In this document: in pieces, positions 1 to 60,557 of the stretch | How positions within the stretch are numbered: the first letter of the stretch is position 1 | How the letters are laid out: the number at the start of each line of letters is the position of its first letter | Assembly: GCA_024137785.1 (NCBI GenBank) | Contig: JAHRHZ010000002.1 | Span: 19,240,685-19,304,684 of the forward strand | From: Ginglymostoma cirratum | Lineage: Eukaryota | Direction of reading: 5' to 3' | Length of the DNA: 64,000 bases | Notes under the pieces: generated by a model | What the model was told of the DNA's origin: nothing | The model's input: the letters and a program-made list of their open reading frames with translations, nothing else | Database searches by the model: none | Program-made: the position numbers and the translations under genes

Positions 1-729
1 CACGTAGAATAAGCATCAATCAATTTACTGGGTGTGAACAGGTTACTGAGACCTTGGGGGCCCGAATGTGAACACGCCGATCCAGCGGGCCAAGTTTGAA
101 AAGCTTCTGAGTGCGAAACTGTGGTGCGCAGGAGCATTAATAGTCCAGCCAAAGCTCATCTCCTCCTTGGTCTTCAGTAATCGCGTGATATATGTGTTTT
201 GCTAATCCTTCTGGTTCAATTTTGCAAAACATTATGATTTTGTAACCCCTAGTATTCGAATATTCGTCCTATTGTACAGCAACACTGCATGTTGAAACGA
301 TTTGACAAACAGAAGAACTTTTGTTGTTGTTATGTTGCATTACGCTACTAAAAAGCCCGGACCATGCGAATGGTTAATGACGTCAATGGTGAACAATGTT
401 AGGCTCTTCGGGGAAGCATTTTAGATGCATTTTGAACCCAGTCCGCCCGACGGAAAAACAATGCAGCGGGTGCACACTTGTTCTGTACCTGCCAGATATT
501 TTCATCCCTTTAAGGTATTGCAGATTTATCTCAGACATAGTAAGAACTGCCGATGCTGGAGTCAGAGATAACACAGCGTGGAGCTGGAGGAACACAACAG
601 GCCAGGCAGCATCAGAGGAACAGGAAAGCTGACGTTTCGGGTCGAGACCATTCTTCAGGTCCCGACCTGAAACAGCAGATTTATCTTCCGCGTGATGAAT
701 TGAATTCAACACACCTGCTGCGGAAAATC
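1..729 (-). pseudogene. Possible decayed V-J-(C1) gene running off the window start
   Basis: Acceptor tttacag|GFSAAGVLN, KIS(G)RY, (G)FK, SNRF, KIEPE, SFG, VFTFGPP. Interrupted by a 143-bp PLE fragment and longer than a canonical V. Confidence 0.3.
532..674 (-). mobile_element. Short Penelope-derived terminal-repeat fragment with 12-bp TSD
   Basis: TSD gcagatttatct at 520-531 and 675-686. Hammerhead-like CTGAAGA..GAAACGTC on the minus strand. Confidence 0.7.
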
Positions 730-883
730 CTGTAAACATTTAATCGTCTTTACAAAGTGTTCTAATTTAGAGCTAAAACTCCTTTCCGATCCTTTTCTTT
801 CCGTGCTGTCATGAACCCATACTATGGGCAGAGTTTTCCATCATGTTTCTATAATATACATCAGGAAATCACGTAGAATCACA

Positions 884-2090
884 GAATATAGGAGCAAGAG
901 TAGGTCATTTGTCTCTTCAAATCTGCTATTCATTATAATGGCTCATTATTCAACACAGGTGCCTGTTCCCGCTTTTCCCTAGAACTTATGATCGCTTTAG
1001 CCCCAAGTGCTATATTCAACTCCTTGAAATCATGCAATGTTTTGCCTCGACCGTGCTTTCTGTGGCAGAAAATTCCACCTCATCTAAGTCTAAAATGGTA
1101 TACTATGTATCCTCTGTCTGTGACGCCTGATTATGGGCTCACTGCTATCGGGAATGCCCTTACTGCCTCGATCCTGTCTAGCCCCGTTAGAATGTTATAG
1201 CTTTTAATGACATCCCTTCACATTCTTCTAAACTCCATCGAATGTAATCCTAACCGATTCAATTTCTCCTAACATATCAGACCCCTCATCCAAGGAATTA
1301 TTCTGGTAAATAGATAGAATCCCTACAGTGTGGAAACAGGCCCTTCGGCCCAACAAGTCCACACCGAACCTCAGAGCATCCCACCCAGACTCATCCCCCT
1401 ACAACCCACTTTATCTACGCATCCCTGGACACTACAGGCAATTTAGCATGGCCAATCCACGTAACCTGCACATCTTTGGAAACCGTAGGAAACCCACGCA
1501 GACACGGGGAGAATGCGAAAACGCCATACAGTTACCTGAGGGTCGAATTGAACCTGGGTCCCTGGTGCTGTGAGGCAGCCGTGCTAACCACTGTGCCACC
1601 GTGCCGCCCTGGTAAACCGCTGCACTCGCTGTACAGTGTAGAACATAGAACATTACAGAGCAGTACATGCCCTTCTGCCCTCGATGTTGCGCCGACCTGT
1701 GAAACCAATCTGAAGCCCATCTAACCTACACTATTCCCTTATCATCCATATGTTTATCCAATGACCATTTAAATGCCCTTAAAGTTGGCGAGTCTACTAC
1801 TGTTGCAGGCAGGGCATTCCACGCCTTTACTACTCTCTGAGTAAAGAACCGACCTCTGACATCTGTCCTATATCTGTCAACCCTCAAGTTAAAGCTATAT
1901 CCCCTTCGTGCTAGCCGTCACCATCCGAGGAAAAAGGCTCTCAAGAATATCCTTCCTCAGATAAAGAGACCAAAACTGCACACAATATTACAGATGTGAT
2001 GTAATGAAAATCCTGTATAATTGTGGTAAGCCTCCCCTGCACATGCACTCGAATCCTTACGTTATGAAGGCCGACGTACCATTTGCCTCA
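884..2090 (-). mobile_element. Old CR1 LINE 3' fragment containing a nested SINE and a younger CR1 tail (1638-1945)
   Basis: Reverse-complement CR1 3' UTR/RT C-terminal sequence with short tandem tails (tagaacatagaac). Confidence 0.75.
1311..1608 (-). mobile_element. HE1/V-SINE-type tRNA-derived SINE, full length
   Basis: Head GGGCGGCACGGTGGCACAGTGG (A box), GGTTCAATTC (B box), V-type core, CR1-like tail. TSD ctggtaaa at 1303-1310 and 1609-1616. Confidence 0.88.
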
Positions 2091-2322
2091 GGAACAAAGA
2101 CAGAAGTTGCTGGCGAAGCTCAACAGGTCTGACAGCTTCTGTGAAGAAATCACCAGAGTTAACGTTTCAGGTCCGGTGACCTTTCCTCAGAACAGTTCTC
2201 AGGAAGGATCACTGGATCCGAAACGTTAACTATGATTTTTTCTTCGCAGATGTTGCTAGGCCTGCTGAGCTTTTCCAGCAACTTCAGTTTTTGATCCTGA
2301 TTTACAGCATCCGCAGTTCTTT
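2091..2322. mobile_element. Palindromic Penelope-derived element (~100-bp arms, centre 2194)
   Basis: Imperfect inverted repeat with a hammerhead-like core in each arm. Confidence 0.75.
2157..2194 (-). ncRNA. Minimal hammerhead ribozyme motif
   Basis: GUU-CUGAGGA-A-AGGUC(accg)GACCU-GAAAC-GUU-AAC: intact core, stem II and a short stem I. Confidence 0.5.
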
Positions 2323-2609
2323 TAGTACCAGTTGCCTCCTATACCACAGTTGTATTTCTCCTCTTTAAATTGAATTCTTGAAATGTTCCACATCAAATCG
2401 CTAACTTAAAAAAAAATCCTTAGTAATGTCCTTGACAGGTCTATTTGTCCTTGACACTTTCGTTTGTCTTTGACACGTTCATTTATTTATTTACATCCAA
2501 AGCAATTACGTCCTCCCCCAACACAAGGATGTGGTGTTTGCGCTCAGGACTACCTCATCACCACTTTTCTTAAGTATTACACGATTTCTAAATTGTCTGA
2601 CTTTGAGTA

Positions 2610-4739: not shown

Positions 4740-5352
4740 AGCTAGGAGAATTGGAATGCATATTGAACGGCACTGCATTCCCTTTGATGGGAAAACTCAG
4801 TAGCCTTTGTCTATGTTGCAGCTTTGTTCAAGGTATCAGGTATAGTCGTCATAGTCGAGAGACAAGGGCCGCGGGTAACCATGCAAAGTTAAACTTCTTA
4901 CATACTAAAATGGGCCAATCAGATCACAGCAACGAGCAAATTGTTAATATAGAGTGGTGTGCCAGCTACCCAATCATGGTTGCACAATCCAGCCTTGTTG
5001 TTCAATAGTATACGCGGAGGGGTGGAGGGGCGGTGGTGGAGGTGGGGGAGAAGAGGGAAGGAATGTATCAGGGATACGAGAAAAACAATAAAACAAGAAA
5101 TTGTATTGTATTGAGCCAAAGCGCATTAGACTGCCCTGCGTGGTATGTCCTGAATACCTCTCCTTGCAAGCGACCAGTAAATGCTCGAATAAGCTACCCC
5201 GTGCCAGAACTTGCTGTCTCTTGAAAGTTATTCCAACTGAGCCTTCGCTCCCAAAATATATGAATGTCCTTTCATGTCAGGAAGGAAGCTACTTGACGTT
5301 GAAAGCTACTAAATTCTTCACTTATGTTAGTGTCTGGCAGCTGGATACAGAG
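4740..5352 (-). pseudogene. Decayed intronless V-J-C1 Ig-superfamily gene (possible leader relic ~5600-5671)
   Basis: One frame reads IQLPDTNISEEFSSFQ(R)QVASFLT*KDIHIFWERR...FTGRLQGE, then FYC (5093-5085), WVAGTPLYI (from 4972), LCMVT, T*YL. C-W and C-C spacings are near canonical. Confidence 0.5.
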
Positions 5353-5839
5353 CTTTGACATTACAACAAAAAGTTCCAAGGGGAAAAAAAAAACTGTTCT
5401 TTCTTAATATGCTCTGTAGACGACCCAGACTTCCGGAAATATGTTACTTTGTTCATGAAATTTATCCTACGATGAACAATTTCTTCAGTTCCTAGTAATA
5501 GCATTTTCCGCTCCCCGCATCTTGACAAGTTTTGAAAATCAACAACATGCGCAGGGAAAGAGTGCTCAACCAACTTTGGCAATGAAACACATGCAGCGAG
5601 TAATCTACTGACTCTTAGCAATAACAGTACAGGGATAATGACACTGTATGTTCTTTTTTTAAAGCGGCCATTGATCTTGCGCAGGGTGTAACTGTCAGAG
5701 ACTGTCTCTAAAAGCTTGAAACCAAGACTAATTGTAATTCTGGTGTGATGTTTCATCAGCATTAAAAGATGGAGTTCAGTTTACCTTCCCGCAATGATTT
5801 GAGGGGAAGCATTTGCTCTCATAAATATTTTAACTCCAG

Positions 5840-10459: not shown

Positions 10460-10987
10460 GCCACAACAATGTATGTTTATTTAGTCAAGTGCTGACTATA
10501 CGAAAGATAAAATATAGAATGTAAGACATACAAGATATGAAGGAGATTTTTTTCTTGCCCCGCGGTGCAGTTATTCTATTCAATGCAATGCAGCTTATCT
10601 ACACGGCAATGTAAGAAGAAAAGGAAATTCCACGAATTGCTCATTTTGCACACATACCTTCACATGATAATCAATCACTCTTCGTTTAGACATTCACCAA
10701 AGCGAACTCTGTCGGCTATAGCTTTAGTGAAATATGTGTGTTGCTTTAATTACATTTAATCCTACATTACAAAAATACATGAGAAGTAGCTTTGAGTATC
10801 TTTATCGTCCTGCATTTTATGCTGTTAAAAGTCTGCCGTTATATGACTTTCAGTTTAAAACCTGACCGCATTTTATACATTTTTACTTCAGAGTACAGAA
10901 CCCGCAATGTGTTTCTTCCCTCTTGAGTGTTGCAACATGTCCTTCCATCGCTAAAATCCACAGTAGTGAGACCTGTAGACTCTCACC
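10460..10987 (-). pseudogene. NCR3/NKp30-like pseudogene (V + TM relics)
   Basis: Across frameshifts: VRVY../LWILAMEGHVATLK../HIAGSVL*SK../SYNGRLLTA../MYFCNV (10987-10760). TM relic YLVCLTFYILSFV* around 10500-10540 with flanking splice-like sites. Confidence 0.6.
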
Positions 10988-11245
10988 CTATATAAATGAT
11001 GAATTAGGTAATACCAAGTGTGCACTTTTAAGTCAGATATTGTACGAATTGAATTTCTTAGGTATTAATGCATTTCCAAGGATTTTCTAAGCAACCTGTC
11101 TCTGTACAGGATGTTATAAAGTAGACTTTCACGTTTTAAAATTGTTTGCCTCAGGTATCAGTATGTGTACTGGGGTTCAAGTATATCTTGCCATCTGACA
11201 ACGTCGTTTCCCTTCTTGCCAAGCTCGTTAATTTCGTTGACGCCT

Positions 11246-11255
11246 CACTTCCTGT
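11246..11255. promoter_or_regulatory. ETS-family motif (CACTTCCTGT) in the putative gene 1 promoter
   Basis: ETS core 200 bp upstream of the gene 1 ATG in a relatively CpG-retaining stretch. Motif match only. Confidence 0.3.
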
Positions 11256-11445
11256 CAGATGTAAGCCGATCAGTTCAGCAGTAATTTACAAAACCACGTT
11301 GCAAATTTACCAGCAACTCGGGGTTCAATCTGCACCATTACGTGCTGTAAAGCTCGATATTGTATCACTCTAAAGGCTGATCTTATCTTGTGCTGCAATT
11401 CGGACTAACGACATTCATTTTCCTGTTTAAACTCAGTTCATTACA

Positions 11446-11506
11446 ATGGTGACAGAACGGTGGTCAACAGCTGCTCTCTTCGTTCTCATTTCAATTTCTC
11501 TATCAG
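11446..11506 (+). CDS. NCR3-like: Gene 1 exon 1: signal peptide MVTERWSTAALFVLISISLS(G)
   Basis: ATG at 11446, hydrophobic 20-aa leader, phase-1 donor CAG|gtaagt at 11507, matching the phase-1 acceptor of the V exon at 15095. Confidence 0.8.
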
Positions 11507-12289
11507 GTAAGTGCATAGTGACGCTCTAATTGTTGCTAATTATAAGAAAGGAATGTATCATTAATTATACCAAGGGGGCGATTACATGTATTTCTGAAAC
11601 CATAGCTTAATAAGTTGCTATATTGCATCAAGCAGACGCAGACTAAATATTATTTCCAAAATTAGATGAAGCATTTGTTCAATTACTCAAAACATTCAAT
11701 TATTGCATTTAGCTTCAAGACATGTTTAAACTCCAGCACTGAAAATCACTCGAGTAAAAGCGCCTCTGTCCTAAGCGCATTATAACCAAATACAAACGCC
11801 TTCTGGTAACAATTTATATTAACATCATTCTGTGAATGCGCTACTACATTAACACAGCTGCACATTTTCATGTAAGCAGTGATTAAATACCCGTAAACAT
11901 CTTATCTCCATCTCACTGATACCTTTCCTATTTGTTTTGCTAAATAGCTGCTTCGCTGAGTTACCAAGCTTCACCTACCAAACAGAATTTCAGTAAACAG
12001 GTTATTAGATCGGTGGTGTCCGAAAATCAAAGGTTACCTTCAACTTAATAACTGCAGATCATTTAGCTAAGCTACCCACAATATTCCCACTGTGGATTTC
12101 TGGGAGTCGTGAATCCTAACCCTTGATAAGAAGCTTTTTATACTTTTTTTGAAACCTATTGTACATCCTTTTTATGCTACTTGTGCTAGAAACATATCAA
12201 TAACATTTAATGAGTGCCAATGAAGACTTAGTTAGCCCTATGTTTCATTATTTCCTTGCTGTTTCTGATTAGCGAGACTTCAGCTGGAG

Positions 12290-14150: not shown

Positions 14151-15094
14151 AGCATTAATTCACTTTACATGAAAAGATGCAGCTTATGTTACAAGAGAGA
14201 ACGTTGCTTGACTTCATTGCCTTAACAGAGGCTTGAAGAGGTTCAAGAGTTCATCAAAATGACGATCTCTCCCTTCACTGAATTAGTTTCTTATGGTAAC
14301 TTGTAACATAAGACTTGATAAGAACTGACGGTAGCTGGGAAAACGTCGGTTTGTACGCAACAAATAGGAAGGGGGATGAGATAGGGAGTAAACAATAGGA
14401 TAGTGCCTGAAGAAAGCGAAGAGCAAAAACAAAGTGCATTGAGCTGCTTTGGGACTTATTGGTAATGAAGTAATTAAAAAATCAGCATTTACTCCCTTAT
14501 CTTCTTTCTTTTAATTCTTTGAATTTCTTTAATTTTTTTTTCTCTCATTCTTTCTCTCCTGTCTTTCATCGTTCATTCTAATAATTTATTTTGCAATTAA
14601 TAACAAGACACTTTTGGATTTGGGCAAAGTATACCCTGAAGTTGCATGACGAAATATTGGACTTGAAATTTTAGAATTGCATATCTTTCAACCCAAAACA
14701 CCTCACGGTGCCTATTCACTGCCAATGAATGACGACTGAACTGTCATCCTGTGTGCTTGCGATGTCAACATACCAAAGAATTTACTCGCAGCAATGACCA
14801 GCAATCACAATGACATAAATCGCTCTTAAGTTTTTTTCTTGCTTTCTTTTGAACAGTAACATTTGGTTACCGCGCTAGCTGTACTTTATACACTTAAGAC
14901 AATTTGGGCAAAAATGTTCACGTAGTTACTGCTTTCAAATGATCTTAGAATAGCACTTTCAAACCTTGATTAATAACATTTCAGTCAAAAGTCATATTGA
15001 GACCATTAAACCAATTTGGCATGGGTACATGGTGCATAATATAATAAATTAGCCAATTATAATGGTTTTTTTTTCTGTTTCTGTGCACAACTAG

Positions 15095-15418
15095 GTATGG
15101 AGGCTGGTGATGTAGTTCAAACTCCCACTTCAATTCATATAATGGAAGGCGAGAGTGTGATTTTGAACTGCTCCTTTCATTTGCAAGGACTGGGTGCCTA
15201 CAGTTGGAGAAGAGACGACAGTCCCATAAACTTTGAATCACCGAGATACAAACAAAGAATTATAAAAGCTGACTATAATGCTTTCAATTTGGGGAAAGAC
15301 GCATCTATTCAAATTACGAATATGACAGAGTGCGACTCCGGCACATATTACTGTGAGGTTGAAATAATGGCGAAACAGAAGACTACAGGCAATGGAACCG
15401 TGGTTACTGTAGAACGGC
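15095..15418 (+). CDS. NCR3-like: Gene 1 exon 2: VJ-type Ig V domain, NKp30/NCR3-like
   Basis: Polypyrimidine-ag acceptor at 15094, C|gtaagg donor at 15419. DVVQTP..EGESVILNCSF..GAYSWRRD..DSGTYYCEVEIMAKQKTTGNGTVVTVE has the canonical C/W/C and GxGT, and parallels NKp30 (CSF..GSVTWFRD..YVCRVEVLGLGVGTGNGTRLVVE). Confidence 0.92.
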
Positions 15419-15735
15419 GTAAGGAACCGAACCGTAAGGAATTTTGAAGTTGTTTTTGGAATTAAAACGATACCTAATTGTTTCCCCACGCTATTATCAT
15501 TCCATTTCTCTGCAACTTTCCTCTGCCTTCGCCTCTGCGTTGCTCACTCTTGCTGCCCATGAGAATTACACATCTTTACCTCTCTTTTCCTCGCTCCAAA
15601 AGTCCATCTCGACTGCATGCTTTTGTGTTTGTCCCCGTGTTCCTGTCTCATCCTTCTCAATCGCTGTGTTATTTGCCTTTAGACTTTGCATGTACATTTA
15701 TAAATAAATGAATGATTTTTCATTCCTTTCAACAG

Positions 15736-15870
15736 ATGCTTGTGATAAAGCAAAACCTCTAAAAACCATGTCATTTGAATGGATATGGATTGCAGTGGCA
15801 GGAGGAGTCACGTTGCTGGTCACTCTGTCGCTGCTTGTGGTAATCATAATTCTTGCTCGACGAAACAAAG
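15736..15870 (+). CDS. NCR3-like: Gene 1 exon 3: stalk + transmembrane (H)ACDKAKPLKTMSFEWIWIAVAGGVTLLVTLSLLVVIIILARRNK
   Basis: tttcaacag| acceptor, AAG|gtact donor, 135 nt, phase 1-1. Long uncharged hydrophobic helix followed by RRNK. Confidence 0.88.
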
Positions 15871-16864
15871 GTACTTGATATATTGGAAATGGCAAGAATG
15901 TCATGGATTCATAACGCTTTCTATCCCTTGACTCATAGTACCAAAATATTGTAATAATATGATAGCTCTTTTGAAATTTTGGAGTAAATTGTTAACATAT
16001 TTTCCATTTTGCAATGAATCAAGCTTAGATAGTGCTAATGTTTTTCATGGGTTATCTGAACAGCTCTGGTATCCAGGTTACGCAAAGGTATTTTGCCCGT
16101 GGAGAAGCTGCAGAAAAAAATGATTTATTCGAATTATACCAGGACTTAGAATCTATGCCTATCAGGAATGAATATACTGGCAAAGTAAGCATAAAACAGG
16201 GATATCTTCAAGATTGTGACAACGTTTGATAAGTATAGATTCACAAAAGATACATCTGTTAAATGATAATAGATGGGCCTTTAATGTGAAATTATTACTG
16301 ATGATGTCAGTATTTAATTGTGGAAAAACAATTTTATCCAGAGAGTGTTTAGAATGTGTAACTCGCCACAACAAAGTGTAACTGAGGTGACTAGGATAAA
16401 TACATTTTAGGAGAACTTGGACAATCGTAAGAGACAAGGAATTGGTATATCGAACATATAATGGCGTTAGATGAGGAAGGGTTTGAATAATCTGATAACA
16501 AACAACGATAGGATGATGTTAGTTTGAATGACCAACTTTTGTGTTCTAATTATAACAAAACTTTCAGACGTCTGTTGTGCTGGGGCACGTTTTGCTTTTC
16601 AGGCAACGTAAGGTAATATGTCTTAATAAAAATACTTGTAACCTGATCCTGCTTACGTGGAAAAATAACGGGGAGGAAATGAAATTAAGCAGTAAAAGAG
16701 AATGAATTAGTGCTAGCAGACATTGCAGTTCAGACCTTAATGTCAACCAACAGATTATAACAAGATCAGCAGAGATACATGAATGTTTAACAAATAGATA
16801 CAGTTTGTCATTGTGCTGTCGTATTAATAAATAACCATTATTCTGCTCTACCATTTTCTTACAG

Positions 16865-16883
16865 CATACGCTTTGCTTGTCAG
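16865..16883 (+). CDS. Gene 1 candidate cytoplasmic micro-exon (A)YALLV(R)
   Basis: ttttcttacag| ... AG|gttagt, 19 nt, phase 1-2, frame-compatible with exon 3 and the next exon. Confidence 0.55.
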
Positions 16884-16969
16884 GTTAGTCACTCAACAAC
16901 TTGCTTGTCGGTATATTTTGGTGCTCTGCTTTTCTCTGAATGTTTGTTAAGTATCTTCTTATTCTGCAG

Positions 16970-17004
16970 AGAATGTTCCTCCTTCGACTCTGCAAAAGAG
17001 CTGG
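16970..17004 (+). CDS. Gene 1 candidate cytoplasmic exon (R)ECSSFDSAKEL
   Basis: tcttcttattctgcag| ... G|gtgagt, 35 nt, phase 2-1, open. Confidence 0.55.
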
Positions 17005-17134: not shown

Positions 17135-19129
17135 ATTGCTTCAAATCAATGATTTCTACTACGCTTGGGTTGGAAAATAGAACCTTAATCAGAGCATACA
17201 AACACGTTGTTATTTGTAAAGAAAAGTTTTTATATTCATCGTTGCGTCTGACAAATATAAACCCGACATGGACAATCAATTGGCATTAGTAAGAGAAGTA
17301 TTAGATCCTACAGGATTCTCTTTGCTCAGAGCAGTAACGAGCATCTACATATCACTTTTATTTGGAGACCAAGCGACTTTCCATGAAGGTTCGAATTTGA
17401 TCACATTTCATCTACATTTTGAGACTTCAAAGAAGGTGAAATGTCAATGGGCGGAGCCCCTGAACAGATTGAACAGAAATTGTTTCAGGATAGGATTCAC
17501 TGAAGGAACTTAAGAGGTGCTTCAGCTGCATTATTTCATGACGTGCTAAAGCCTCGGATTACAACTTTGGCAAGGTTGGCCAAACATAGTCCTCCTAATT
17601 GCTATCAGCATTCGAGGTATTGTAAGATGATAGTTTCACTTAGACTCATTTATAAACGTCCACAATGCCTTTGCAAGAACTTGGAATTATTCAAATCAAT
17701 AGCAGTTTCAGAGATGCTGATAAGCAGGCTATGCTTTTAAGAAGAAGTAGAGGGTAAGGTGCTGGGAAAATATTTGTAAAATTCGTTTTAACGTGAAACG
17801 AATACATTCATATACTTAACATAAAAGGACAAAGACTTTGTTAAATCTCAATTTCTTTGGAATGCAATTTTAAATCAAAATGAGTGCACACTATTTTAAC
17901 AACAATATTTACCTTCTTAGAATATCCTAGGCATTTTAAGAATATTTAATCTCAAGTCTTAATTGCTCTAAACATCTTGAAGATATATATTCCTTGCTGC
18001 ACCCCCATCAGCTTAAATTTGCCAATTACTCAAGAGGCATAGTCAAGGATATCAACGTTGCTTAAACAAGAGCATAATAACATAAAAATTACTATACAAA
18101 TGTACAAATTTCACACAGGAGTAAGCCACTTGGTATCTCGAATCTGCAAGGCCACTCAGATACTTCACGTTCCTGTCTAATGTATAATCTTTGGCAATGT
18201 ATAATCTTTGTTTATCAAGAACCTGTTCATCTGTATTTTTTTTTAAAAAAAATGTTTTCCCTTCCATTGAAGACGAGATTTCCAATGATTCCAGACACTT
18301 TATGAGAAAAAAAATCTTCCCACGTCTGTTTTAAATGAGCGACCCCTTAAATAGTGATCCTAGTTCTAGATCCACCAGCATGTAGAAGCATCTAGTCCAT
18401 GTCTACCCCGTCAAGACTTCTCAGCACCTTAAATATTTGAATCAAGCCAGCTCTTACTCAACAATTGGTACAAGTCTATAGACTTCTGAACTTATTCTCA
18501 TAAGAAAAGGAATCCATTTCAGGAGTAGAACTAAGTCATGCGAAACCGTAAGCTGTTCTACAATTCAATGCCATCATGAATTATCAGCTATATTAACCAC
18601 ATTTTACCCTTTAGTAGCCAGCCAACATGTTCAGAATGTGCTGATTTATTGAGAAATTTGGTCAGTTAATTTTAGTTTCAAAAACAAAGGCAGAAGAACT
18701 CAGTAAACAGTTGACTAATTTTTGTGTATCAAAAGCCTACAATTAATATAGAGAGAATATACTCATCAAAAAAATTCAATCAAAGGTCTTGGATTGCTTT
18801 TAATCGGCATAAGGAGGCTCTAAAAGTTTAAGTGCTATGCATTATGTTAAATAGTTCTGAATACAATGACAGTGTGGAGATATACATTGTCACAAAAAAA
18901 ATCATTTATTATTTTATTCTATTTTCTTGGAATAAGTTCAATCTCCAATATAGGCTGTGATCTTGCACTTTATTGAGCTTCCTAAATCTATTCTTTTTTT
19001 CATAGCTAGTAAAGGAATTCCCAAAGAATCCCTTTTCAGCCGTTTTCTGGAAAATGGTTAAACAAGCTGGGTCATGCTCACTTTCCACAGAGATATTAAC
19101 AAATAAATTAAAGAGTAACATTAAACGCT

Positions 19130-38901: not shown

Positions 38902-40496
38902 ATGATGCATCTTTCTGAGTTACTGCTGTCAACGATGTTACAATATGTAAGCTATTTAATATTTTCTATCATAAGCTTAGATTTTGCTTGGGCTGTCAGA
39001 TGGTCTTCTTTGTAATTCACTTCTCTGTCAATTGTGGTCATACGATTTGATTTTACTGATTTCAACTTGCGGTAACATTTACCATCACATTGCTTTATAT
39101 TTAATTAACTGTGAAAAATCTGTGCCATCCTTGTGAAGAGTGATAATTCTTCGACTTATTAGGTCAGTTCCAATACTAGCCAACGTTCCATTCCTATGGA
39201 TTGTTCATGGATACTTGGATGGAAGTTTGGCTGAGTTTCCATTCATACTCTATCCTGATTTTCTGATTATCTGCTGCCAATCATGGTATCAAATCTAAAC
39301 ACACCTCTAAGAAATTAACGCTGAAATGTGAACAGAATGGCACTTTTACTTTTTGAAAATCTATTGAATATTTATTTCCAAGCACTAGCAGCTCTCAGCA
39401 TAGTTATCATTATACCTAATGGTGCAAAGTAAGACCAGGGCTTTATGTTGATATTCCATACCAAAGATATTTGTGAGGCTACTAATTAGTAAGTGGGTAA
39501 GCCCACTTACTCTGTATCTACAGCGTACCAGTGCAATAAGTCAATGGTGTATCTGTCTGGTGTAAAGACAACAAGAATGGGACCATTTTTAACAGTTCAA
39601 CTGTCATCTACAAGATCCCCTGCAGGGACTGCGAGAAACAATACATCGGACAAACTTAAGGAAACTAACAACAAGAGTACATGAACACCAACTGGCTACA
39701 AAAGGACACAACCAATACTCACTCATATCAATCCACATAGACAAGGAGAACCACCACTTCGACTGGGACAACACCAAGATCCTGGGACAAGCTACGCAGA
39801 GACAGGCATGAGAATTCCTAGAAGCGTGGCACTCCACGAAGCATGCTATTAATAAACACATTGAACTCGACCTCATATACCTTCCACTAAGAGGAAACCC
39901 GGAAGTGAGACAATCCATCTCAACAGACCCTGGAGTTTAAAAACTAGGTGGGAAAACACACCGACACTTCATCGGATGCTGCACTGAGGATGTTACCAAG
40001 CAGAGTAATGAAACGTCTGTGAAACAAGAAACCAGCTGGGCCAGCCAACCAACCTCCACAACCTCAGATCAACTAAATACACCGGTCGAATTGCTGCAAC
40101 AAATAGACAATTCGAGATTGAAACCAGATTGTGTCTATTACCAACCTCCACAATAAACAGATTGATTCAGGAACATACTACTGCCAAATAGAAAGATTTG
40201 CCTTTGGAACGACAACCAGGCCAGGTGCAATACCAACTGTGAAAGGTAGGGTTACTCAAGATTTGTCCATTGTACAGTGCTGTCCATTGATTGCTTTGCT
40301 TTAACGTAAAATGAAGTTGACATAGTGCACTATTTTCAAGGATTGAAATACTATCAGGCGCATTTAGGCAAATGCTGTGTTCAGATATAATTCACTGCCA
40401 GTAAGATGTTTTTATTTAATGAAATATAATTTATGTCATTTTTCTATGTTTTATTTAGCAATAGTGATTATTACATTAATGTGTTTATTGGTATAA
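38902..40496 (+). pseudogene. Gene-2-like NCR3 pseudogene: leader (38902-38946), V exon (~39440-40245) split by a Penelope insertion, TM relic (~40367-40496)
   Basis: AHLLCIYSVPVQ*VNGVSVWCKDNKNGT...[PLE]...KYTGRI../SITNLHNKQIDSGTYYCQIERFAFGTTTRPGAIPTVK|gtaggg. The pre-ATG sequence agatcactgcgaagtgATG resembles gene 2 agatcgctgagaagcaATG. Confidence 0.75.
39603..40064 (+). mobile_element. 5'-truncated Penelope-like (Poseidon-type) element, GIY-YIG end
   Basis: VIYKIPCRDCEKQYIGQT/RKLTTRVHEH...HHFDWDNTKIL...EFLEAWHS...INKHIELD. Hammerhead motif at 39981-40020. TSD cag(t/a)tcaact at 39593-39602 and 40065-40074. Confidence 0.9.
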
Positions 40497-41458: not shown

Positions 41459-41791
41459 CAGTAAAGGTCAAAGCATTTCAATCACCGCCTTCCAACTGAG
41501 ACTATGGAAGGAGAGATGGCCTTTCTGCTTTGCACTTACAGCACATCCAAAGCACACCTCATTGGAGCATTTTCATAGTACAAAAGTGTAAAATGTGCAA
41601 AGGAAGAGTCTAAGGTTTCCAAAACACCTGCAAAATATTCAGGCCAAAGTATTGAAGTGAATGGTACATCTTTTGACTTTTCCATCATATTTATTAAGCT
41701 GAATGGCAATGACTCAGGAACATATTACTACCAGATGTAGTTTACATTTTTGGCAAAAACACTGGATAAGGAACAATATTAACAGTTAAAC
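41459..41791 (+). pseudogene. Gene-2-like NCR3 V-exon pseudogene
   Basis: MEGEMAFLLCTYSTSKAHLIGAFS*YKS...KYSGQ...NDSGTYYYQM*.../TG*GTILTVK. Core Trp to TAG, Cys to Tyr, frameshifts, and donor GT mutated to AT. Confidence 0.8.
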
Positions 41792-42039
41792 ATAAACTGA
41801 TAAGGGATGGGGGAGAAGGACGAGCGGGAAAGAGTAAGGAACATTTAAATGTGTATGGGAGCCCCAAAATCTGAAAGAAATGGTAACAGAACCTCTTTTG
41901 TCAGAGATACTTCACTCTTCTTTGGCATTAGAAAACGTGCAATGATTTAAATTCTTCAAATTAATACCATATGAAGGGCACCAATGAATCTTACAAGCTA
42001 CAGACGGAGAGAGCAAATGCAGCTTACAACTGGGTAGGG

Positions 42040-43575: not shown

Positions 43576-43669
43576 GTGAAGGAACGACGATGTATTTCCA
43601 AGTCAAGATCCTGTGTGACTTGGAAAGGGAACCTACAGAAGACGGTTTTCCCTTTCTCATGCATCCGCT

Positions 43670-44345
43670 AAGAGTTGTTAAGATTATTGAAAGCGATACA
43701 TGACGCTTGTTTCGGGTCAATATGCGATCGGTCGCTTCGTTCTTGCTGTTTAGGGTACAGGCCTGCGTACCTACTGAAACGTAGAACAACAAACCATAAT
43801 GCCAGTCCAATCGAAATTGCAATCTCATATTATTTGCTAGATAGCTTCAGTAGATCAAGGAGTTTCAAAATACTGGTGAAATGCTCAATTTAGACGGCTA
43901 CTGAATCCGCAAGACGCCATGACAAGCGGAGATTGCAATCAATAGTGTTTCTATTGCAGTAAAAGTTGTGTAGTGATTCTTCAGTAAAGCATCCAAAATT
44001 GGTAATTAGGTTCAGAAGGTTTGCTTCTGCTGCCCACGTAATGTTACTGTGAGGCCCTTGGAACATCCAATCCCAACTCTCATTCCCAGGCGGGCTCTTG
44101 GCCCAAGAGCAGTCGAGTGCAAAATTGCTGACAAACGTTCTGATAGTTACTTTCTTCTGTTAGTCTTGGGTGGTACGTGAACAGTCAAGAGATCACTTGG
44201 CAACGTCGGTGCACAGTTCTTTCAAACTGTGATAAGATTTCCATTGCAAACGTATGTGCTACACGGATAGTTCCAGTTTGAAATATGTTTGCACAAAGTT
44301 GATGCAAATGTGTGCCGGCACCCATATCCAACGATTTTCTCTCTG
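43670..44345 (+). pseudogene. Decayed intronless V-J-C1 Ig-superfamily gene
   Basis: VKIIESDT, (G)YR, DSFSRSR, FYC (43955), FSKASK/LVIR, then in the same frame AAHVMLL*GP..SAKLL, WYVNSQEIT, VLSNCD, *N, C..RHP. Confidence 0.45.
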
Positions 44346-55059: not shown

Positions 55060-55665
55060 CGATTGCGTATATTTTGCACAATGGCCAAAACTGGACGATG
55101 AGAATCCCGTTAAATGTAACGGCTTAGATCATAAAACATAGTGGAAATATATAAAGTAATTACTTTAAAGCATGTAGTTACTTTCGAACGTGCTATTGAG
55201 TCTTAGTACGGGGTAACTAGACAGGGATTTTGTTTTTGTCTTGTTCCTGACATTTGACTCTCTAGTTTTCACAGTGAAGGCACAAAGTGGAGGAACATTT
55301 CAAAGCCCAGCTTCAACAGTCGAGAACGAGCAAAGAACGAAGAGGAACAATAAAAATACAAAAAACTGGAACGTTTCTCACCGAAGCAAGCTCCGTCATT
55401 GCGCTGCACAGTAGAACAGCAATTCGAAATCCAGAGATACATACGTAGCTACTGGTAAGTTACATCAGACAAATTGCTATTAAATGCCCGTGAAGGATAC
55501 AAAGTATTAACCAATCACTAACACCGATAAATGTTTGACTTGTGCGTTCAGGGAGGGTTTTCTGATATTTGTGCCAATGATGTTACATGCCACTTGTCAC
55601 CACCCGTCCAGCTCCTAACTTTCCTTGTCCTAAAACTGGACAAAACTGAACAGCACGTGGTTTTG
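55060..55665 (-). pseudogene. Decayed intronless V-J-C1 Ig-superfamily gene
   Basis: HW-K, GVSD(W)L, LTSSYV, FYCAA (Cys 55410-55408), CFGE, STLCL, VK(C)Q, YPVLRLNSTF, RYI*RDSH, AIVQNI, then a gtaag donor. Correct order, several frameshifts. Confidence 0.55.
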
Positions 55666-56030
55666 TTTTCCCATTAGACAATAGATCAAACTTAAAGTGA
55701 GTATGTGGGGCATGGCAGAATAAACATACCCGCATTTTTCAATGAACTGATTTAAGTATTTCAATAGCACAAAATGCTATATTTTAATGATAACAGATAT
55801 AAAAGTGCACAGAGGAAACGATGGACATATAAATTGTGTTAGTACATACTATATTTTTGTTCCCATTTAACAATTAGAATTGTTTCATTCATAATTTGAT
55901 CTTATAGTACAAATGTCAAAAAACCATATGGTACCCCAATCGATAAAGTTTAACGATTATTCATGGGATACTCGATGGTTGGATCAACTCTTCTCGCTCT
56001 GCAGCAAATCCAATTTGAAATCCTCAAGAC

Positions 56031-56149
56031 TCAAAAATATGCGAGAGAAATTGTGATAATGATGCAGACAGAAAACACAGCAAGTTTCAGTCCAGTCAGA
56101 ATCATTTGCCAAAGCAGAGACCTTCTGCTGCTCATGAGTGGCTGTCTGC
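56031..56149 (-). CDS. NCR3-like: Gene 2 stalk/TM terminal exon (C)RQPLMSSRRSLLWQMILTGLKLAVFSVCIIITISLAYF*
   Basis: tttttgttttccatag| phase-1 acceptor, hydrophobic helix with an internal Lys, TGA at 56033-56031. Confidence 0.85.
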
Positions 56150-56863
56150 CTATGGAAAACAAAAAGAATCAAATTCAGCACTTATTTTCCAAGTTTCATT
56201 GTTACAATTCAATGCAATGCTGACTCGGCTGGATGCCAATTCCCTTACACGTTCCATTATTCATTGGTCTTGGGCCCTCACATTTACTTTCGCTCTTGGT
56301 TATCAATACTGGATACTTTCCCAGCTCCCGCCCCCCAGCGTCCCCTGGCCCCCACTACCACCACTACTAGTCTCTTGTGGTATGTTGATAGTGTTTCTAT
56401 TTCTTGGCTGAAAGGTCTAGATTCAATGCCTACCTGTCTCAGAGGTATGTCATGTCATGTTCAAATAAGTTAATTAAAGTTACTATAATGGCATTAGAAG
56501 GACATTTTTGTTGTAGCTATCATTGAATATGTCGGCTCAGTACCTGTTGCATTTTATATGAAGCAGTTGCGTGCCTCATGACATGCAAGTTTTCATTCAC
56601 CTGTTTGACGTCATGATGTTTAACAGTAAATTATTCAATGAAATACAACAGTTTGCAAGGCAGCCACCCCATATATTAAGATAAACTGCAAGTGTTTTCT
56701 AATGTGAGAATATGGGCCACGACGACAATTAATTCTCTTTATCTATCTATCTGGATATCTAACTCACCCAGCTAGAATTCTCTCATGTCTTCCTAATTTT
56801 AAACCCATAACGCACTCGTCCAACACATTCATTATTGCTCTCATTCCCTTCGTGTAAACTTAC

Positions 56864-57214
56864 ATTTAACTGTTAGCCTTGTTCCTGGTCCAAACTCTTC
56901 CTCAAAGAACAATATTACCTGACAGTAATATATGCCCGAATCATCCTGTTTCAGATTCGTAATCGCGATGGAAGCATTTCCATTGGTTCTGAAAGAGGGT
57001 CTGTCCACCTGGATTATCCTACCCAAGAATTTTGCAGATTTATTGGTTACTTTGGCATCTCCTGTTCCATTTTTAATGTCTTTGTGCCACGAGAAGGCTC
57101 CAACCACTTGATCATGAGATGCATTGTAAGTGCAGAGAAAGTGAGCTGTTTCTCCCTCTGTAGCTTCAATGTAGAGAGGTTCTTGATAGACTTGGAATTT
57201 GCTTGCGTCTGTGG
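56864..57214 (-). CDS. NCR3-like: Gene 2 VJ-type Ig V exon, NKp30/NCR3-like
   Basis: TDASKFQVYQEPLYIEATEGETAHFLCTYNASHDQVVGAFSWHKD...FLGRII...DDSGIYYCQVILFFEEEFGPGTRLTVK. Acceptor at 57215 (in-frame alternative at 57209), T|gtaagt donor, 351 nt, no stops. Confidence 0.92.
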
Positions 57215-57338: not shown

Positions 57339-57381
57339 TCAACAATAATATTGAAGTCCAGAGCAGGCCAATGGTGTTCAT
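57339..57381 (-). CDS. NCR3-like: Gene 2 leader exon MNTIGLLWTSILLL(T)
   Basis: Minus-strand ATG at 57381, 43 nt, A|gtgagt phase-1 donor. An upstream acceptor at 57396 implies a 5' UTR exon. Confidence 0.85.
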
Positions 57382-57754
57382 TGCTTCTCAGCGATCTAGA
57401 AATCATAAAAGTATTTTGAAAATCCTACATTCAAATCGTGATATTTAATGGGAAAGTCAAAGAACAGTGTTCAAAAAACAAAGTTCTCCAATGATACTGG
57501 CATGCTTCCTATCTCTACACTGACACCTTCTTATGTTCCTACATGCACCTTGATACCCCACCAGTAAGATGCCCTCACGTTCCTAATTCTGAAGAAATTT
57601 GTCAGCACTTTAAGTATCCTACTAGCAGGAATGTTAAAACAGGTTTCTTATGCAGAATACAACCGTGTTTGTTCCTGTGATTGTTTAATTTGAAGGTAAG
57701 GTTTTAGAAGAAATCTCTGAGGAACACGTTCAATAAAACAATCATGATGAACCT

Positions 57755-58056: not shown

Positions 58057-58499
58057 TAAATAATTAAATCACTGCAGTTAATGTTTCATCATTCTAATAA
58101 GTAGGTTTGTAATAATTTGCTGAAGTGGCAAATAACCAATTGAAGTGTACATGTTCAATTGCGTTTAGACGCAGCTCAATGAATCAAGTGTTTTGATTGG
58201 GTACTAGAAAGAAGGTCAACAATGATTTTCTCCCTTAAAGTGCCACAGTGTAGAATCATAGATAACAGAAGGAGGTCAGTTAGCCAATGGTGCATGGCCT
58301 ATTCCTTGCGCCAATTTTACTCCTAAACTACAATGTAAACAATTTTCACAGTTACCTAAACCATGATTTAACCTGAACCGAAATAGCCTTTGACATCATT
58401 TACTACATTTTTGTGTTCAGTGCCATCAAGGGTTGTTTGAGAGACCAGATGAAGACAGAGACCACATCTAGGTTATTTTTAAAAATAATTTTAATATCG

Positions 58500-59500
58500 T
58501 TGTTTAGGAAACAAAAGTTGAGGTTTATTTTGAAGGAGTTCAAAAGATGCTCACTCAATTCATCCCTGGGATGAAGGTATTGTGTTATGACGAGGCATAG
58601 AACTGGCTACGCCTATATCCAACGGAAACTGGAAGAATGGGAAGTCATGTTATCAAAATATGTAAGGTTTGTTGGGACCGAGTAGGATGGATAATTGGGA
58701 GAATATCTCTTGTGGAGGAGTTTAAATCTAGGGCACATGGTTTACAGATAAGGGGTTTCCTTATTCCTTTAAGTAATGAAGACGTTGCTATCTGGGTTCA
58801 TATTTATTTAGCACTCTTAATTGCCATTGAGAAGATGTTTGTGAGCGGCCTTCTTGAACTTCTGCGTTCCTCGGACGTTCACTAGTCTGTTAGAGATCGA
58901 GCTCCCAGATTTTAACCAAGCAACAGTGAAGGAGCGACAATTTAGTTCCAAGTCAAGATAGTGTGTGAATTGGAGAGGAAATAGTAGTTACCCATGCATC
59001 TACTTCCCTTGCCTAACTAGCATAAAGGCATAAGGTTTGAAAGGTGCTATTGAAGGAGCTAGATGAGTGACTACAGTGCATGCTGTAGATGGCAAATACT
59101 TCTGCCACTATGCATTGATAGCGAAGTGTGAGTTCGAATTTCTGAGGAAGGTTAGCCAGACCCGAAACGTTAACTCTGCTTTTTCTTCACAGATGCTGCC
59201 AGACCTGCTGAGCTTTTCCAGCAACTTCTGTTTTTGTACGTTCAAGGTAGTGGATGACTGTGTCAATCAATTGGGCTTTATGTAAAATGCAGGGGAATAT
59301 TTTCTCTCACAAACTTGTTAAGGGTGGAATAATTTTCCCCGGAATGCAATGGGTACTTATATTTATTCAAGGTTGAAGTAGGTAGATTTTTAGTCAAAGG
59401 TTAGAATGTGCACACAGAAAAGTGGAAGTAAGACTGCAACAAGATCAGCCATGATGCTAAAGATGCTTCTGCTCCTAAGACTGCTGCTCCTATGTCCCTA
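58500..59500. mobile_element. Nested CR1 / SINE-tail / Penelope fragments
   Basis: CR1 3' coding remnants (+); hammerhead-like ctgaggaagg...cccgaaacgttaact at 59142-59175. Confidence 0.6.
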
Positions 59501-60229
59501 TAATAGAATTACTCATCAACCTGTTGGTCCCTCCTTTTGCCTCAGATTGTTCAGAAAGTTTGATCAGGCTTGGTATTTCACTTCTGAATCAAAGTTGACT
59601 CTATTAAATAAATAGGTATGCATAACTGATCCTCACACTTGTCACTGATAATTGCTTCTATTATCTTATTTAGAATGAATGTATAGTTGATGTATAATTA
59701 ATGTATAGGTTCCTCCTCTGTGTCCACTACCTCCCTCCTAACGGTTTTCAGTCTTTTGCCGATTTTCTGCTTCGACACATTCAGCACTCATTTACAAAAG
59801 AATACATTTTCTCTCTGTGGATTTGCTAAGTCTACTTAGCCCACCCAGAATGCCTATTGCATATTTAATAAAATTTATTTTTGTGTTTGAGGTAATTTTC
59901 CCTGGAGTGAGTTTGCCACTCTGAAAATAAATGAAATGATATTGAAATATTCGCTGGGATATTGCATAACAATTTTTTCACCTATTGTTTCTGTGGAATA
60001 CGATTTGTTTTAAAATGGACATGTTTCTTATAACGTTCATTTATCATGCAGTTTACTGTTTAAAATATGCATTAACTTAATAATAGGAATTCCAGTCTAA
60101 GCAAACTTTTACCAAACTAAATAAACTGAACATAACTCACCACACTGATACTTACGTTTTGAAAAGTCGGAAGTGGGATAGGTAACTTTCTGCCTCAATT
60201 GTTTTCACTTATACCGACCATATCAGTTG

Positions 60230-60557
60230 AGATTAGAGACATGTGAATAATTACTGAACAATCACTAACAAAATGGAATCCAACGCTGCAAAGGTATTAA
60301 TAACATATAACTCCAACGGATACCTTGTCCGGAATGTTCTGTTTTCACTCCTCCCTTCTCTCTGCGTCCATTCCACCTTTGAACTATTACAGTACAAATT
60401 GTTGCCTTTGGCTCAATTTCAAACCAATCACCTTCAGTGGAGTCAAATCAAAAGCTACAGAAAGTGGATGCAGTAGTCCTACAGGGAAATGCGAATCGCC
60501 TTTGTCAGTTGTTTGTGGAGCTGCAGGTTGTGGAGGCTGGGAGAAGGTTAGAAATGA
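60230..60557 (-). pseudogene. Possible decayed V-set exon (NCR3/CD28H-like, family unresolved)
   Basis: tgttgttctag|SFLTFSQPPQ..TTDKGDS/FPCR..WFE..LDS..CSVII; compare NKp30 LWVSQPPEIRTLEGSSAFLPC. Confidence 0.3.

What the first reader, a model, noticed from the sequence alone, without database searches (positions are those of the whole stretch)
1..60557. Hidden cluster of non-rearranging antigen-receptor-like genes: two live VJ receptors among about ten V, V-TM, V-J-C1 and C1-C1 relics
Seen: many of the non-repeat islands translate, across stops and frameshifts, into ordered Ig V or C1 motifs, in both orientations, with V and J-like parts germline-contiguous and no RSS. Established (from recall): NKp30/NCR3 has a non-rearranging VJ domain, sharks carry a divergent MHC-linked NCR3 family, and non-rearranging V-C1 genes are discussed as relatives of the Ig/TCR precursor. 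Inference: this is a birth-and-death cluster in or near the shark MHC where NCR3-like and single-exon VJ-C1 genes are interdigitated. Standard annotation would show only two genes.
Basis: partly seen in the sequence, partly recalled or inferred. Interest (0 to 1): 0.85.

Follow-up and report, generated by a model that had tools for sequence, protein, structure and literature searches.

The report
Known shark NCR3 genes, few relics
This nurse-shark stretch holds two already published NKp30-like (NCR3) immune-receptor genes and the decayed remains of one further two-domain copy; the other claimed 'hidden' antibody-like relics, including every constant-domain one, score no better than shuffled sequence.

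Summary
The finding is partly confirmed and much smaller than claimed. The window is nurse shark (Ginglymostoma cirratum). Both "live VJ receptors" are real, and both are already published: their exons are 100% identical to the deposited NCR3 cDNAs QTT61900.1 (gene 1, + strand, 11.4-27 kb) and QTT61904.1 (gene 2, - strand, 57.4-55.8 kb). A transcriptome contig confirms the gene 2 splice joints.

Only two further Ig pieces are real. One is a broken VJ exon at 41.46-41.81 kb. The other is a V exon at 39.44-40.26 kb, split by about 475 bp of inserted sequence. They lie on the same strand, and they best match domain 2 and domain 1 of a sawshark VJ-VJ-TM(Lys) gene model. So they are most likely one dead two-domain paralogue.

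The four other relic sites that the scan's notes locate (4.7-5.7, 10.5-11.5, 43.7-44.3 and 55.1-55.7 kb) give no Ig-family Pfam hit in 135 reading-frame pieces. In a V-family HMM scan they score at the mean of shuffled sequence. No C1-set match, no YxCxVxH motif and no RSS occurs anywhere in the window. Loose "ordered Ig motifs" occur about 57 times per shuffled window, so they are not evidence.

The scan has noted NKp30-like genes elsewhere on this chromosome, one of them with several V exons. Interest is low.

The parts
11446..11508 (+). Gene 1 (NCR3 family, = QTT61900.1) leader exon, ATG at 11446, donor CAG|GTAAGT
   Evidence: 100% tblastn match to P0154 residues 1-21. Splice context.
15094..15418 (+). 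Gene 1 VJ exon (V-set domain with germline-joined J-like strand TGNGTVVTV)
   Evidence: Pfam V-set E 3.3e-14. 100% identical to P0154 and 92% to whale shark P0001. The best full-domain match among solved structures is human NKp30, E 3e-8.
15735..15869 (+). Gene 1 stalk/transmembrane exon (uncharged TM WIWIAVAGGVTLLVTLSLLVVIIIL). The published cDNA reads through the donor and ends RNKGT-stop.
   Evidence: 100% identical to P0154. Translation.
16864..17003 (+). Gene 1 cytoplasmic micro-exons (AYALLVR at 16864-16884; ECSSFDSAKEL at about 16971-17003), inferred from whale-shark isoforms
   Evidence: tblastn with P0001/P0153. Canonical AG/GT contexts. Not verified by nurse-shark RNA here.
17920..17949 (+). 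Gene 1 alternative terminal micro-exon (EYPRHFKNI-stop), as in whale-shark isoform X2
   Evidence: tblastn with P0001, 90% identity.
24952..27055 (+). Gene 1 distal tail exons as in whale-shark isoform X1 (24952-25002 ELPQRKKMRNPVQHQVN; 26972-27055 DDAYLHC...KRNME-stop)
   Evidence: tblastn with the P0153 tail, E 1e-5 and 2e-11. Splice contexts.
39441..39590 (+). psiV-B, 5' half (A-C strands: ...AHLLCIYSVPVQ*VNGVSVWCKDNKNGT), several stops
   Evidence: tblastn E 0.002 to P0002. V-HMM window score 11.5 bits. nhmmer match to the gene 2 V exon, E 0.002-0.009.
39591..40065 (+). About 475 bp of unrelated sequence interrupting psiV-B. It carries a CxxC...YIGQT motif reminiscent of the GIY-YIG domain of Penelope-like retroelements (not confirmed by Pfam).
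   Evidence: Translation. No GIY-YIG Pfam hit. The boundaries are inferred from where homology to P0005 stops and resumes.
40066..40259 (+). psiV-B, 3' half (C''-G strands: STKYTGRIAATNRQ / NQIVSITNLHNKQIDSGTYYCQIERFAFGTTTRPGAIPTVKG), with a frameshift between 40110 and 40122
   Evidence: tblastn E 2.4e-10 to P0005. Pfam V-set E 0.084. V-HMM 23.2 bits. Read through with X, its best hit is sawshark P0005 domain 1, 44% identity, E 8e-21.
41465..41805 (+). psiVJ-A: a complete but dead VJ exon (Trp to stop, second Cys to Tyr, frameshift near 41737, stop inside the J motif FGKNTG*GTILTVK)
   Evidence: tblastn E 6e-18 (P0003) and 7e-20 (P0005). Pfam V-set E 0.014 on one piece. nhmmer E 6e-19 to the gene 2 V exon. 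Best hit is sawshark P0005 domain 2, 50% identity, E 6e-30.
57339..57395 (-). Gene 2 (NCR3 family, = QTT61904.1) 5'UTR/leader exon (ATG at 57381)
   Evidence: Transcript contig piece 57339-57395 with joint 57339|57214. tblastn with P0002 residues 1-15.
56863..57214 (-). Gene 2 VJ exon (FGPGTRLTV J-like strand)
   Evidence: Pfam V-set E 1.1e-16. Mature V is 100% identical to P0002. RNA joints lie at both ends, GT..AG on the - strand.
55770..56148 (-). Gene 2 stalk/TM exon with Lys in the TM (LLWQMILTGLKLAVF...), stop TGA directly after AYF (56031-56033), and a 3'UTR running to about 55770 with ATTAAA at 55788
   Evidence: 100% identical to P0002 residues 133-170. RNA contigs and poly(A) reads cover 55770-56218. 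Stop and poly(A) signal.
4740..5671 (.). Claimed 'decayed intronless V-J-C1' site: not supported
   Evidence: No Ig-family Pfam hit. Best V-HMM window 1.3 bits, against a shuffle mean of 3.0.
10460..11445 (.). Claimed 'dead NKp30-like copy head-to-head with gene 1': not supported. The claimed span ran to 11506 and so also overlapped the real gene 1 leader exon.
   Evidence: No Ig-family Pfam hit. Best V-HMM window 3.8 bits. No tblastn hit from 154 V-set queries.
43670..44345 (.). Claimed 'V-FYC-J reading into C1' site: not supported. It is adjacent to and partly overlaps an interspersed repeat with up to 5 copies in the window (43413-43631).
   Evidence: best V-HMM window 2.9 bits.
55060..55665 (.). 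Claimed 'best-preserved single-exon V-J-C1 relic': not supported. It lies just beyond the gene 2 poly(A) site, and no RNA was laid on it.
   Evidence: (best V-HMM window 2.5 bits).

Best explanation
The window is a segment of the nurse-shark NCR3 (NKp30-like) receptor gene cluster. It holds two functional, already published genes and one dead paralogue, set in LINE/SINE-rich intergenic DNA.

Gene 2 encodes leader, one non-rearranging VJ domain, a short stalk with a Cys, and a TM helix with a Lys, with no cytoplasmic tail. That is the architecture of an activating receptor that signals through an acidic-TM adaptor, as mammalian NKp30 does through CD3zeta/FcRgamma. The signalling mode is an inference from architecture.

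Gene 1 encodes leader, VJ domain and an uncharged TM, followed by either a very short tail (the published cDNA) or a tail built from micro-exons (by homology to whale-shark isoforms).

The two decayed V exons at 39.4-40.3 and 41.5-41.8 kb are the first and second VJ exons of a single former two-domain receptor gene. An intact gene model of that kind exists in a sawshark (VJ-VJ-TM with Lys). The copy here was killed by point mutations, frameshifts and a retroelement-like insertion.

The rest of the 'relic' list is chance motif matching in non-coding DNA.
For: - Both live genes match deposited nurse-shark NCR3 proteins at 100% identity: QTT61900.1 and QTT61904.1.
- A transcript contig shows the gene 2 joints 57339|57214 and 56863|56148 with GT..AG, and RNA coverage runs to about 55770.
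- Human NKp30 is the best full-domain solved match for the gene 1 V domain, and a comparable match for gene 2.
- A V-family HMM scan finds exactly four V loci above the shuffle maxima: 55.0, 53.7, 23.2/11.5 and 20.5 bits, against null maxima of 7.6-12.6.
- tblastn with 154 diverse V-set proteins hits only those loci and the gene 1/gene 2 exons. Four scattered single hits remain at E 0.03-0.09, which is fewer than chance expects.
- Domain-order correspondence holds in both directions. psiB best matches sawshark domain 1 (E 8e-21, against 5e-14 for domain 2). psiA best matches sawshark domain 2 (E 6e-30, against 8e-15 for domain 1). They lie on the same strand, in the same order, about 1.2 kb apart.
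- Sawshark isoform X1 (P0155) adds a TM with Lys that resembles the gene 2 TM.
- Pfam negatives for every other claimed site and for C1-set window-wide.
Against: - No leader or TM exon relic of the dead gene was found. So 'one two-domain gene' rests on domain order and best-hit asymmetry alone. Two separate single-V pseudogenes remain possible.
- The sawshark protein is an automated gene model that could have merged neighbouring genes.
- Piecewise Pfam is only moderately sensitive. It detected 2 of 5 pieces of the true relics, and I had no C1 positive control. Extremely decayed C1 remnants cannot be formally excluded.
- The adaptor pairing of gene 2 and the micro-exon tail of gene 1 in nurse shark were not tested.
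- MHC linkage is taken from the literature, not from this window.
Confidence: 0.88

Rival explanations
1. One reading: a birth-and-death cluster in which NCR3-like genes are interdigitated with about ten relics, including single-exon V-J-C1 and C1-C1 genes related to the Ig/TCR precursor (UrIg-like).
For: - UrIg, a non-rearranging VJ plus C1-domain gene, does exist in the elasmobranch MHC, and NCR3 is MHC-linked (PMC12227049). So the idea is not absurd a priori.
- Two real V relics exist.
- Loose motif chains are slightly more frequent than in shuffles: 76 against 57 +/- 6.5.
Against: - No C1-set Pfam hit in any of 537 pieces tested.
- YxCxVxH is absent from all six frames.
- The named relic sites score at the shuffle mean in the V-HMM scan.
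- They have no tblastn hit from 154 V-set queries.
- Their translations are densely stop-ridden, with no B-strand Cys / C-strand Trp / F-strand YxC in register.
- In UrIg2, the one relative whose gene structure the paper describes, the VJ domain has its own exon and the C domains are encoded by separate exons.
Confidence: 0.04
2. The two decayed V exons are two independent single-V NCR3-like pseudogenes (tandem duplicates of a gene-2-like gene), not one former two-domain gene.
For: - Both are most similar, within the window, to the gene 2 V exon.
- No shared leader or TM relic was found.
- Single-V genes are the form of both live neighbours.
Against: - The best-hit asymmetry matches sawshark domains 1 and 2 in the right order.
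- Multi-VJ NCR3-like gene models are widespread in elasmobranchs. An earlier follow-up in this scan reported spliced multi-V transcripts elsewhere on this chromosome (s1-879659). I did not check that report.
- The 1.2 kb spacing is intron-like.
Confidence: 0.3
3. The decayed V exons are not inert. They serve as gene-conversion donors or as alternatively spliced or non-coding exons for the neighbouring live NCR3 genes.
For: They share an orientation with gene 1 and lie 12 kb downstream of it. V pseudogenes serve as conversion donors in other systems (general knowledge).
Against: - They are only 38-50% identical at protein level to any live V here, and barely alignable at DNA level to gene 1.
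- No tracts of high identity suggest conversion.
- No expression data was obtained, because the single read-laying run went on gene 2.
Confidence: 0.03

Closest known systems
Nurse shark NCR3 family genes (Kinlein et al. 2021, Immunogenetics 73:333; GenBank MT914154-MT914161; proteins QTT61900.1 and QTT61904.1)
   Same: Gene 1 and gene 2 are these very genes: 100% identity over the leader, VJ and TM exons. They share the non-rearranging VJ exon and the type I membrane architecture.
   Different: Nothing differs for the live genes. The adjacent decayed two-VJ copy is, as far as I could check, not in the deposited protein set. The paper itself was not held, so I could not see whether pseudogenes are mentioned.
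Mammalian NKp30 / NCR3 (PDB 3NOI, 3PV6, 6YJP)
   Same: A single VJ-type V domain encoded by one exon. It is the best or co-best full-domain solved match (E about 3e-8). Gene 2 has a basic residue in the TM and a minimal tail, as in activating NKp30.
   Different: Sequence identity is low. Gene 2 uses Lys, whereas human NKp30 uses Arg (from general knowledge). Gene 1 has an uncharged TM. Ligand (B7H6-like) binding is untested.
Multi-VJ 'pIgR-like / SIRP-beta-like / turtle-like' gene models of elasmobranchs (e.g. Pristiophorus japonicus UPI00398F42BF, P0155)
   Same: psiV-B and psiVJ-A match its domains 1 and 2 in order. Its TM with Lys resembles the gene 2 TM.
   Different: The nurse-shark copy is dead and lacks a detectable leader or TM. 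The sawshark entry is an automated prediction.
UrIg / UrIg2 (non-rearranging VJ + C1 domains; PMC12227049)
   Same: Only the non-rearranging VJ exon principle, plus MHC or MHC-paralogue linkage as described in the literature.
   Different: No C1-set domain is present anywhere in this window. Nothing here is a UrIg relative.

Membership tests
Shark NCR3 (NKp30-like) family | Single-exon, non-rearranging VJ-type V-set domain with a J-like GxGT G strand | tested here: met
   Pfam V-set E 3e-14 and 1e-16. The motifs TGNGTVVTV and FGPGTRLTV lie inside the same open exon. No RSS in the window.
Shark NCR3 (NKp30-like) family | Identity with deposited family members | tested here: met
   Gene 1 = QTT61900.1 and gene 2 = QTT61904.1, with 100% identity over the mapped exons.
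Shark NCR3 (NKp30-like) family | Leader / VJ / TM exon organisation, transcribed and spliced | tested here: met
   For gene 2, transcript contig joints have GT..AG ends. For gene 1, this rests only on homology, canonical splice contexts and the identical cDNA-derived protein.
Shark NCR3 (NKp30-like) family | NKp30 is the nearest solved V domain | tested here: inconclusive
   For gene 1, NKp30 is the top full-domain match. For gene 2, NKp30 (E 3e-8) ranks with Ig light-chain V and pIgR domains.
Shark NCR3 (NKp30-like) family | Linkage to the MHC | not testable with these tools
Linkage is stated in PMC12227049.
Activating NK receptors that pair with acidic-TM adaptors | Basic residue in the TM helix and no signalling tail | tested here: met
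   Gene 2 has LTGLKLAVF in its TM, and the stop codon falls directly after the TM. Gene 1 does not meet this: its TM is uncharged. Adaptor binding itself was not tested.
VJ-C1 non-rearranging antigen-receptor relatives (UrIg-like) | At least one C1-set Ig domain (PF07654; YxCxVxH F strand) following the VJ domain | tested here: not met
   C1-set appears among none of the Pfam families listed for 135 + 402 pieces. The YxCxVxH motif count is 0 in six frames.
VJ-C1 non-rearranging antigen-receptor relatives (UrIg-like) | A V-set signal at the claimed relic sites above chance | tested here: not met
   Best HMM window scores are 1.3-3.8 bits, against a shuffle mean of 3.0 and a 99th percentile of 8.6.
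Rearranging Ig/TCR V gene segments | RSS (heptamer, 12/23 spacer, nonamer) flanking V | tested here: not met
   0 matches with a CAC-anchored heptamer (<=1 mismatch) and nonamer (<=2 mismatches). Shuffles gave 0-2.

The most novel reading that the evidence does not exclude
Some of the claimed sites could be remnants of UrIg-like VJ-C1 genes that have decayed below the detection limit of piecewise Pfam and family-HMM scans. That would place Ig/TCR-precursor relatives inside the NCR3 cluster. A more modest alternative is that the nurse shark lineage lost a two-VJ activating NCR3-type receptor that squalomorph sharks retain.
Probability: 0.04. Interest if true: 0.6.

Novelty: already known. Interest (0 to 1): 0.15.

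Why it matters
The finding would have mattered if true, because non-rearranging VJ-C1 relics beside NCR3 genes would bear on the origin of antigen receptors in the proto-MHC. The evidence says they are not there.

What remains is a correct but already published annotation of two nurse-shark NCR3 genes. There is one small addition: a dead two-VJ paralogue, which documents gene loss and turnover in this family.

The result is also a cautionary example. Ordered Ig motifs read across stops and frameshifts occur about once per kilobase in shuffled DNA.

Tried and rejected
No syntenic DNA comparison was therefore possible.
- Kinlein et al. 2021 (PMC8273117) is not held. What I say about it comes from my own knowledge, from the citation in PMC10450919 and from the accession list in PMC12227049.
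- I tried to obtain C1-set sequences for a home-made C1 HMM. None of the 150 representative hits carries a C1-type motif. The C1 test therefore rests on Pfam PF07654 through piecewise scans and on the hallmark motif.
- hmmsearch on whole six-frame translations reports too few domains to build a null. I replaced it with 50-aa sliding windows.
- A search for a TM or leader relic of the dead gene found nothing above noise. The best non-self TM score was 8.5 bits.
- A weak DNA-level hit at 29326-29559 (-) to psiVJ-A (E 0.07) and to V1 (E 0.83) has no Ig features on translation. I rejected it as a relic.
- Rfam at gathering threshold returned nothing. Tandem repeats returned nothing.
- RNA runs X12 and X13 gave almost no reads on the gene 2 region (2 and 0 reads laid). 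Expression level therefore cannot be judged.
- Reads were laid on gene 2. Transcription of the relics and the gene 1 tail exons was not examined.
Exons were searched by reference one at a time.

Full report
**What the window is.**
- The 64 kb contain two intact V-set exons with a germline-joined J-like strand. One lies at 15040-15444 (+) and the other at 56844-57248 (-). Pfam V-set E-values are 3.3e-14 and 1.1e-16.
- The gene 2 V exon, TM exon and leader map at 100% identity (apart from split codons) onto P0002. P0002 is QTT61904.1, 'natural cytotoxicity triggering receptor 3 [Ginglymostoma cirratum]'.
- The gene 1 leader, VJ and TM exons map at 100% identity onto P0154, which is QTT61900.1 and carries the same name and species. 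That match includes the read-through ending RNKGT-stop.
- The window is therefore nurse shark. Both 'live VJ receptors' carry nurse-shark NCR3 protein accessions, and a later paper cites the published nurse-shark NCR3 genes as MT914154-61 (PMC12227049). That these two proteins belong to that series is my inference.
- The primary paper (Kinlein et al. 2021; PMC8273117) is not held.

**Gene models.**
- *Gene 2 (- strand), splicing.* A transcriptome contig joins 57395-57339, 57214-56863 and 56148-56007. The skipped parts read CT..AC on the + strand, which is GT..AG for the gene.
- *Gene 2, 3' end.* A second contig and poly(A) reads extend the 3'UTR to about 55770. An ATTAAA signal sits at 55788, and TGA follows directly after ...LAYF.
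- *Gene 2, protein.* The product is leader, VJ, a stalk with a Cys, and a TM with a Lys (LTGLKLAVF), with no tail.
- *Gene 1 (+ strand), core exons.* The leader is at 11446-11508, the VJ exon at 15094-15418 and the TM exon at 15735-15869.
- *Gene 1, tail exons.* By homology to whale-shark isoforms X1/X2 there are micro-exons at 16864-16884, about 16971-17003 and 17920-17949. Alternatively the tail uses 24952-25002 and 26972-27055. All have canonical splice contexts. These tail exons were not checked against nurse-shark RNA.
- Human NKp30 is the best full-domain solved match for the gene 1 V domain (E 3e-8). For gene 2 it is on a par with Ig light-chain V and pIgR domains.

**Real relics.**
- Two further V loci exist, both on the + strand.
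- psiVJ-A (41465-41805) is a complete VJ exon. Its conserved Trp codon is a stop, the second Cys is replaced by Tyr, there is a frameshift near 41737, and a stop sits inside FGKNTG*GTILTVK.
- psiV-B is split. The A-C strands lie at 39441-39590 and the C''-G strands at 40066-40259. It carries several stops and a frameshift.
- About 475 bp of unrelated sequence lies between the two halves of psiV-B. That insert carries a CxxC...YIGQT motif reminiscent of Penelope-like GIY-YIG domains. This is my reading of the translation; Pfam did not confirm it.
- Read through with X at the breaks, psiV-B best matches domain 1 of a sawshark two-VJ protein: P0005, 44% identity, E 8e-21, against 5e-14 for domain 2.
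- psiVJ-A best matches domain 2 of the same protein: 50% identity, E 6e-30, against 8e-15 for domain 1.
- The longer sawshark isoform (P0155) continues into a TM with Lys that resembles the gene 2 TM.
- The two relics share a strand, lie in the same order and are about 1.2 kb apart. The most economical reading is one dead two-VJ receptor gene.
- No leader or TM remnant was found, so two separate pseudogenes remain possible.
- An earlier follow-up in this scan reported a multi-V-exon NKp30-like gene 8.4 Mb away on the same chromosome piece. That fits this reading, but I did not re-test it.

**The other claimed relics.**
- The scan's notes place four of them at 4740-5671, 10460-11506, 43670-44345 and 55060-55665.
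- *Translation.* Their six-frame translations are dense with stops and show no registered B-Cys / C-Trp / F-YxC pattern.
- *Pfam.* All 135 stop-to-stop pieces of 20 aa or more from these sites were scanned at E<=10. None hit V-set, C1-set, ig, I-set, Ig_2 or Ig_3. The 13 families hit were unrelated singletons with E 0.036-0.2.
- *Sensitivity control.* The same procedure on the true relics gives V-set at E 0.014 and 0.084 for the F-strand pieces and nothing for three other pieces. Sensitivity is moderate, but each true relic is detected.
- *V-family HMM.* I built an HMM from 221 V domains taken from 150 representative homologues. I slid it over all six frames in 50-aa windows with stops as X.
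  - The real V loci score 55.0, 53.7, 23.2, 20.5 and 11.5 bits.
  - Twelve block-wise dinucleotide shuffles give per-window maxima of 7.6-12.6 bits. Best-per-kb in the shuffles has mean 3.0 and 99th percentile 8.6 bits. The reversed sequence gives 9.1 bits.
  - The four claimed sites give 1.3, 3.8, 2.9 and 2.5 bits.
- *tblastn.* With 154 V-set proteins as queries, hits fall only on the four V loci and the known exons. Four isolated hits at E 0.03-0.09 remain, which is below the chance expectation.
- *Position of the 55.1-55.7 kb site.* It lies beyond the gene 2 poly(A) site, and no RNA was laid on it.

**C1 domains.**
- An unbiased Pfam scan covered the remaining 402 pieces of 50 aa or more. 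It found RVT_1 in five pieces and V-set in exactly four: V1, two relic pieces and V2.
- Every other family was a chance-level singleton. C1-set is in no list.
- YxCxVxH occurs 0 times in six frames, against a shuffle mean of 0.3.
- I could not build my own C1 HMM, because no retrieved protein contains a C1 domain. The C1 negative therefore has no matched positive control.

- Allowing frame changes and stops, a C-x(9-17)-W followed 130-260 nt later by [YF]xC occurs 76 times in the window. It occurs 57.4 +/- 6.5 times (range 45-72) in shuffles.
- Such chains carry almost no information.
- The strict F-strand motif [DE]x[AG]xYxC occurs three times: in V1, V2 and psiV-B.

**Other checks.**
- No RSS-like signal occurs in the window, against 0-2 in shuffles.
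- There were no Rfam matches and no tandem arrays.
- Self-similarity shows only about 8 kb of interspersed repeats.
- MHC linkage cannot be tested inside this window. It is stated for shark NCR3 in PMC12227049.
Exons were searched separately by reference.

**Verdict.**
- The real content is already published. The only addition is a probable dead two-VJ paralogue.

Noticed in passing
window 8100-9544 (-), 8664-8996 (+), 48555-49884 (+), 21785-22249 (-): LINE-type retroelement fragments. Five ORF pieces hit Pfam RVT_1, best E 1e-18, but those calls do not say which pieces. The longest open stretch is 348 aa at 48558-49604.
   Followed up: partly
window 6101-6401, 7573-7870, 23631-23858, 38260-38559, 45537-45794, 57756-58052, 62239-62535: Stretches of 228-301 bp, each matching 3-5 other places in the window. 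They look SINE-like, but whether they are one family was not checked. One stretch sits about 360 bp upstream of the gene 2 leader exon. No tRNA/Rfam match at gathering threshold.
   Followed up: partly
window 34407-35498 and 52366-53083: Two copies of a roughly 1 kb element, 91-93% identical. It carries long proline/serine-rich open frames on both strands. A related conserved block (...GPDPKRQLSWSSDAVWPAVF...) recurs at 383-739 and 43256-43828.
   Followed up: no
window 39591-40065: The insert that splits psiV-B translates to ...IPCRDCEKQYIGQT..., which resembles the GIY-YIG endonuclease motif of Penelope-like elements. Pfam gave no hit.
   Followed up: partly
window 15869-15878 and 16864-27055: The published gene 1 cDNA protein ends by reading through the TM-exon splice donor (RNKGT-stop). 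Yet well-conserved downstream micro-exons, with canonical splice sites, match two whale-shark isoforms. This suggests alternative short-tail and long-tail forms.
   Followed up: partly
window 29326-29559 (-): A marginal nhmmer similarity to the V exons (E 0.07 to psiVJ-A, 0.83 to V1). The alignment is gappy and the translation has no Ig features. Probably chance.
   Followed up: yes
window about 17090-17140: A TG/CA dinucleotide microsatellite, read as CVCVCVCVCV in an ORF. The tandem-repeat tool leaves it out by design.
   Followed up: no
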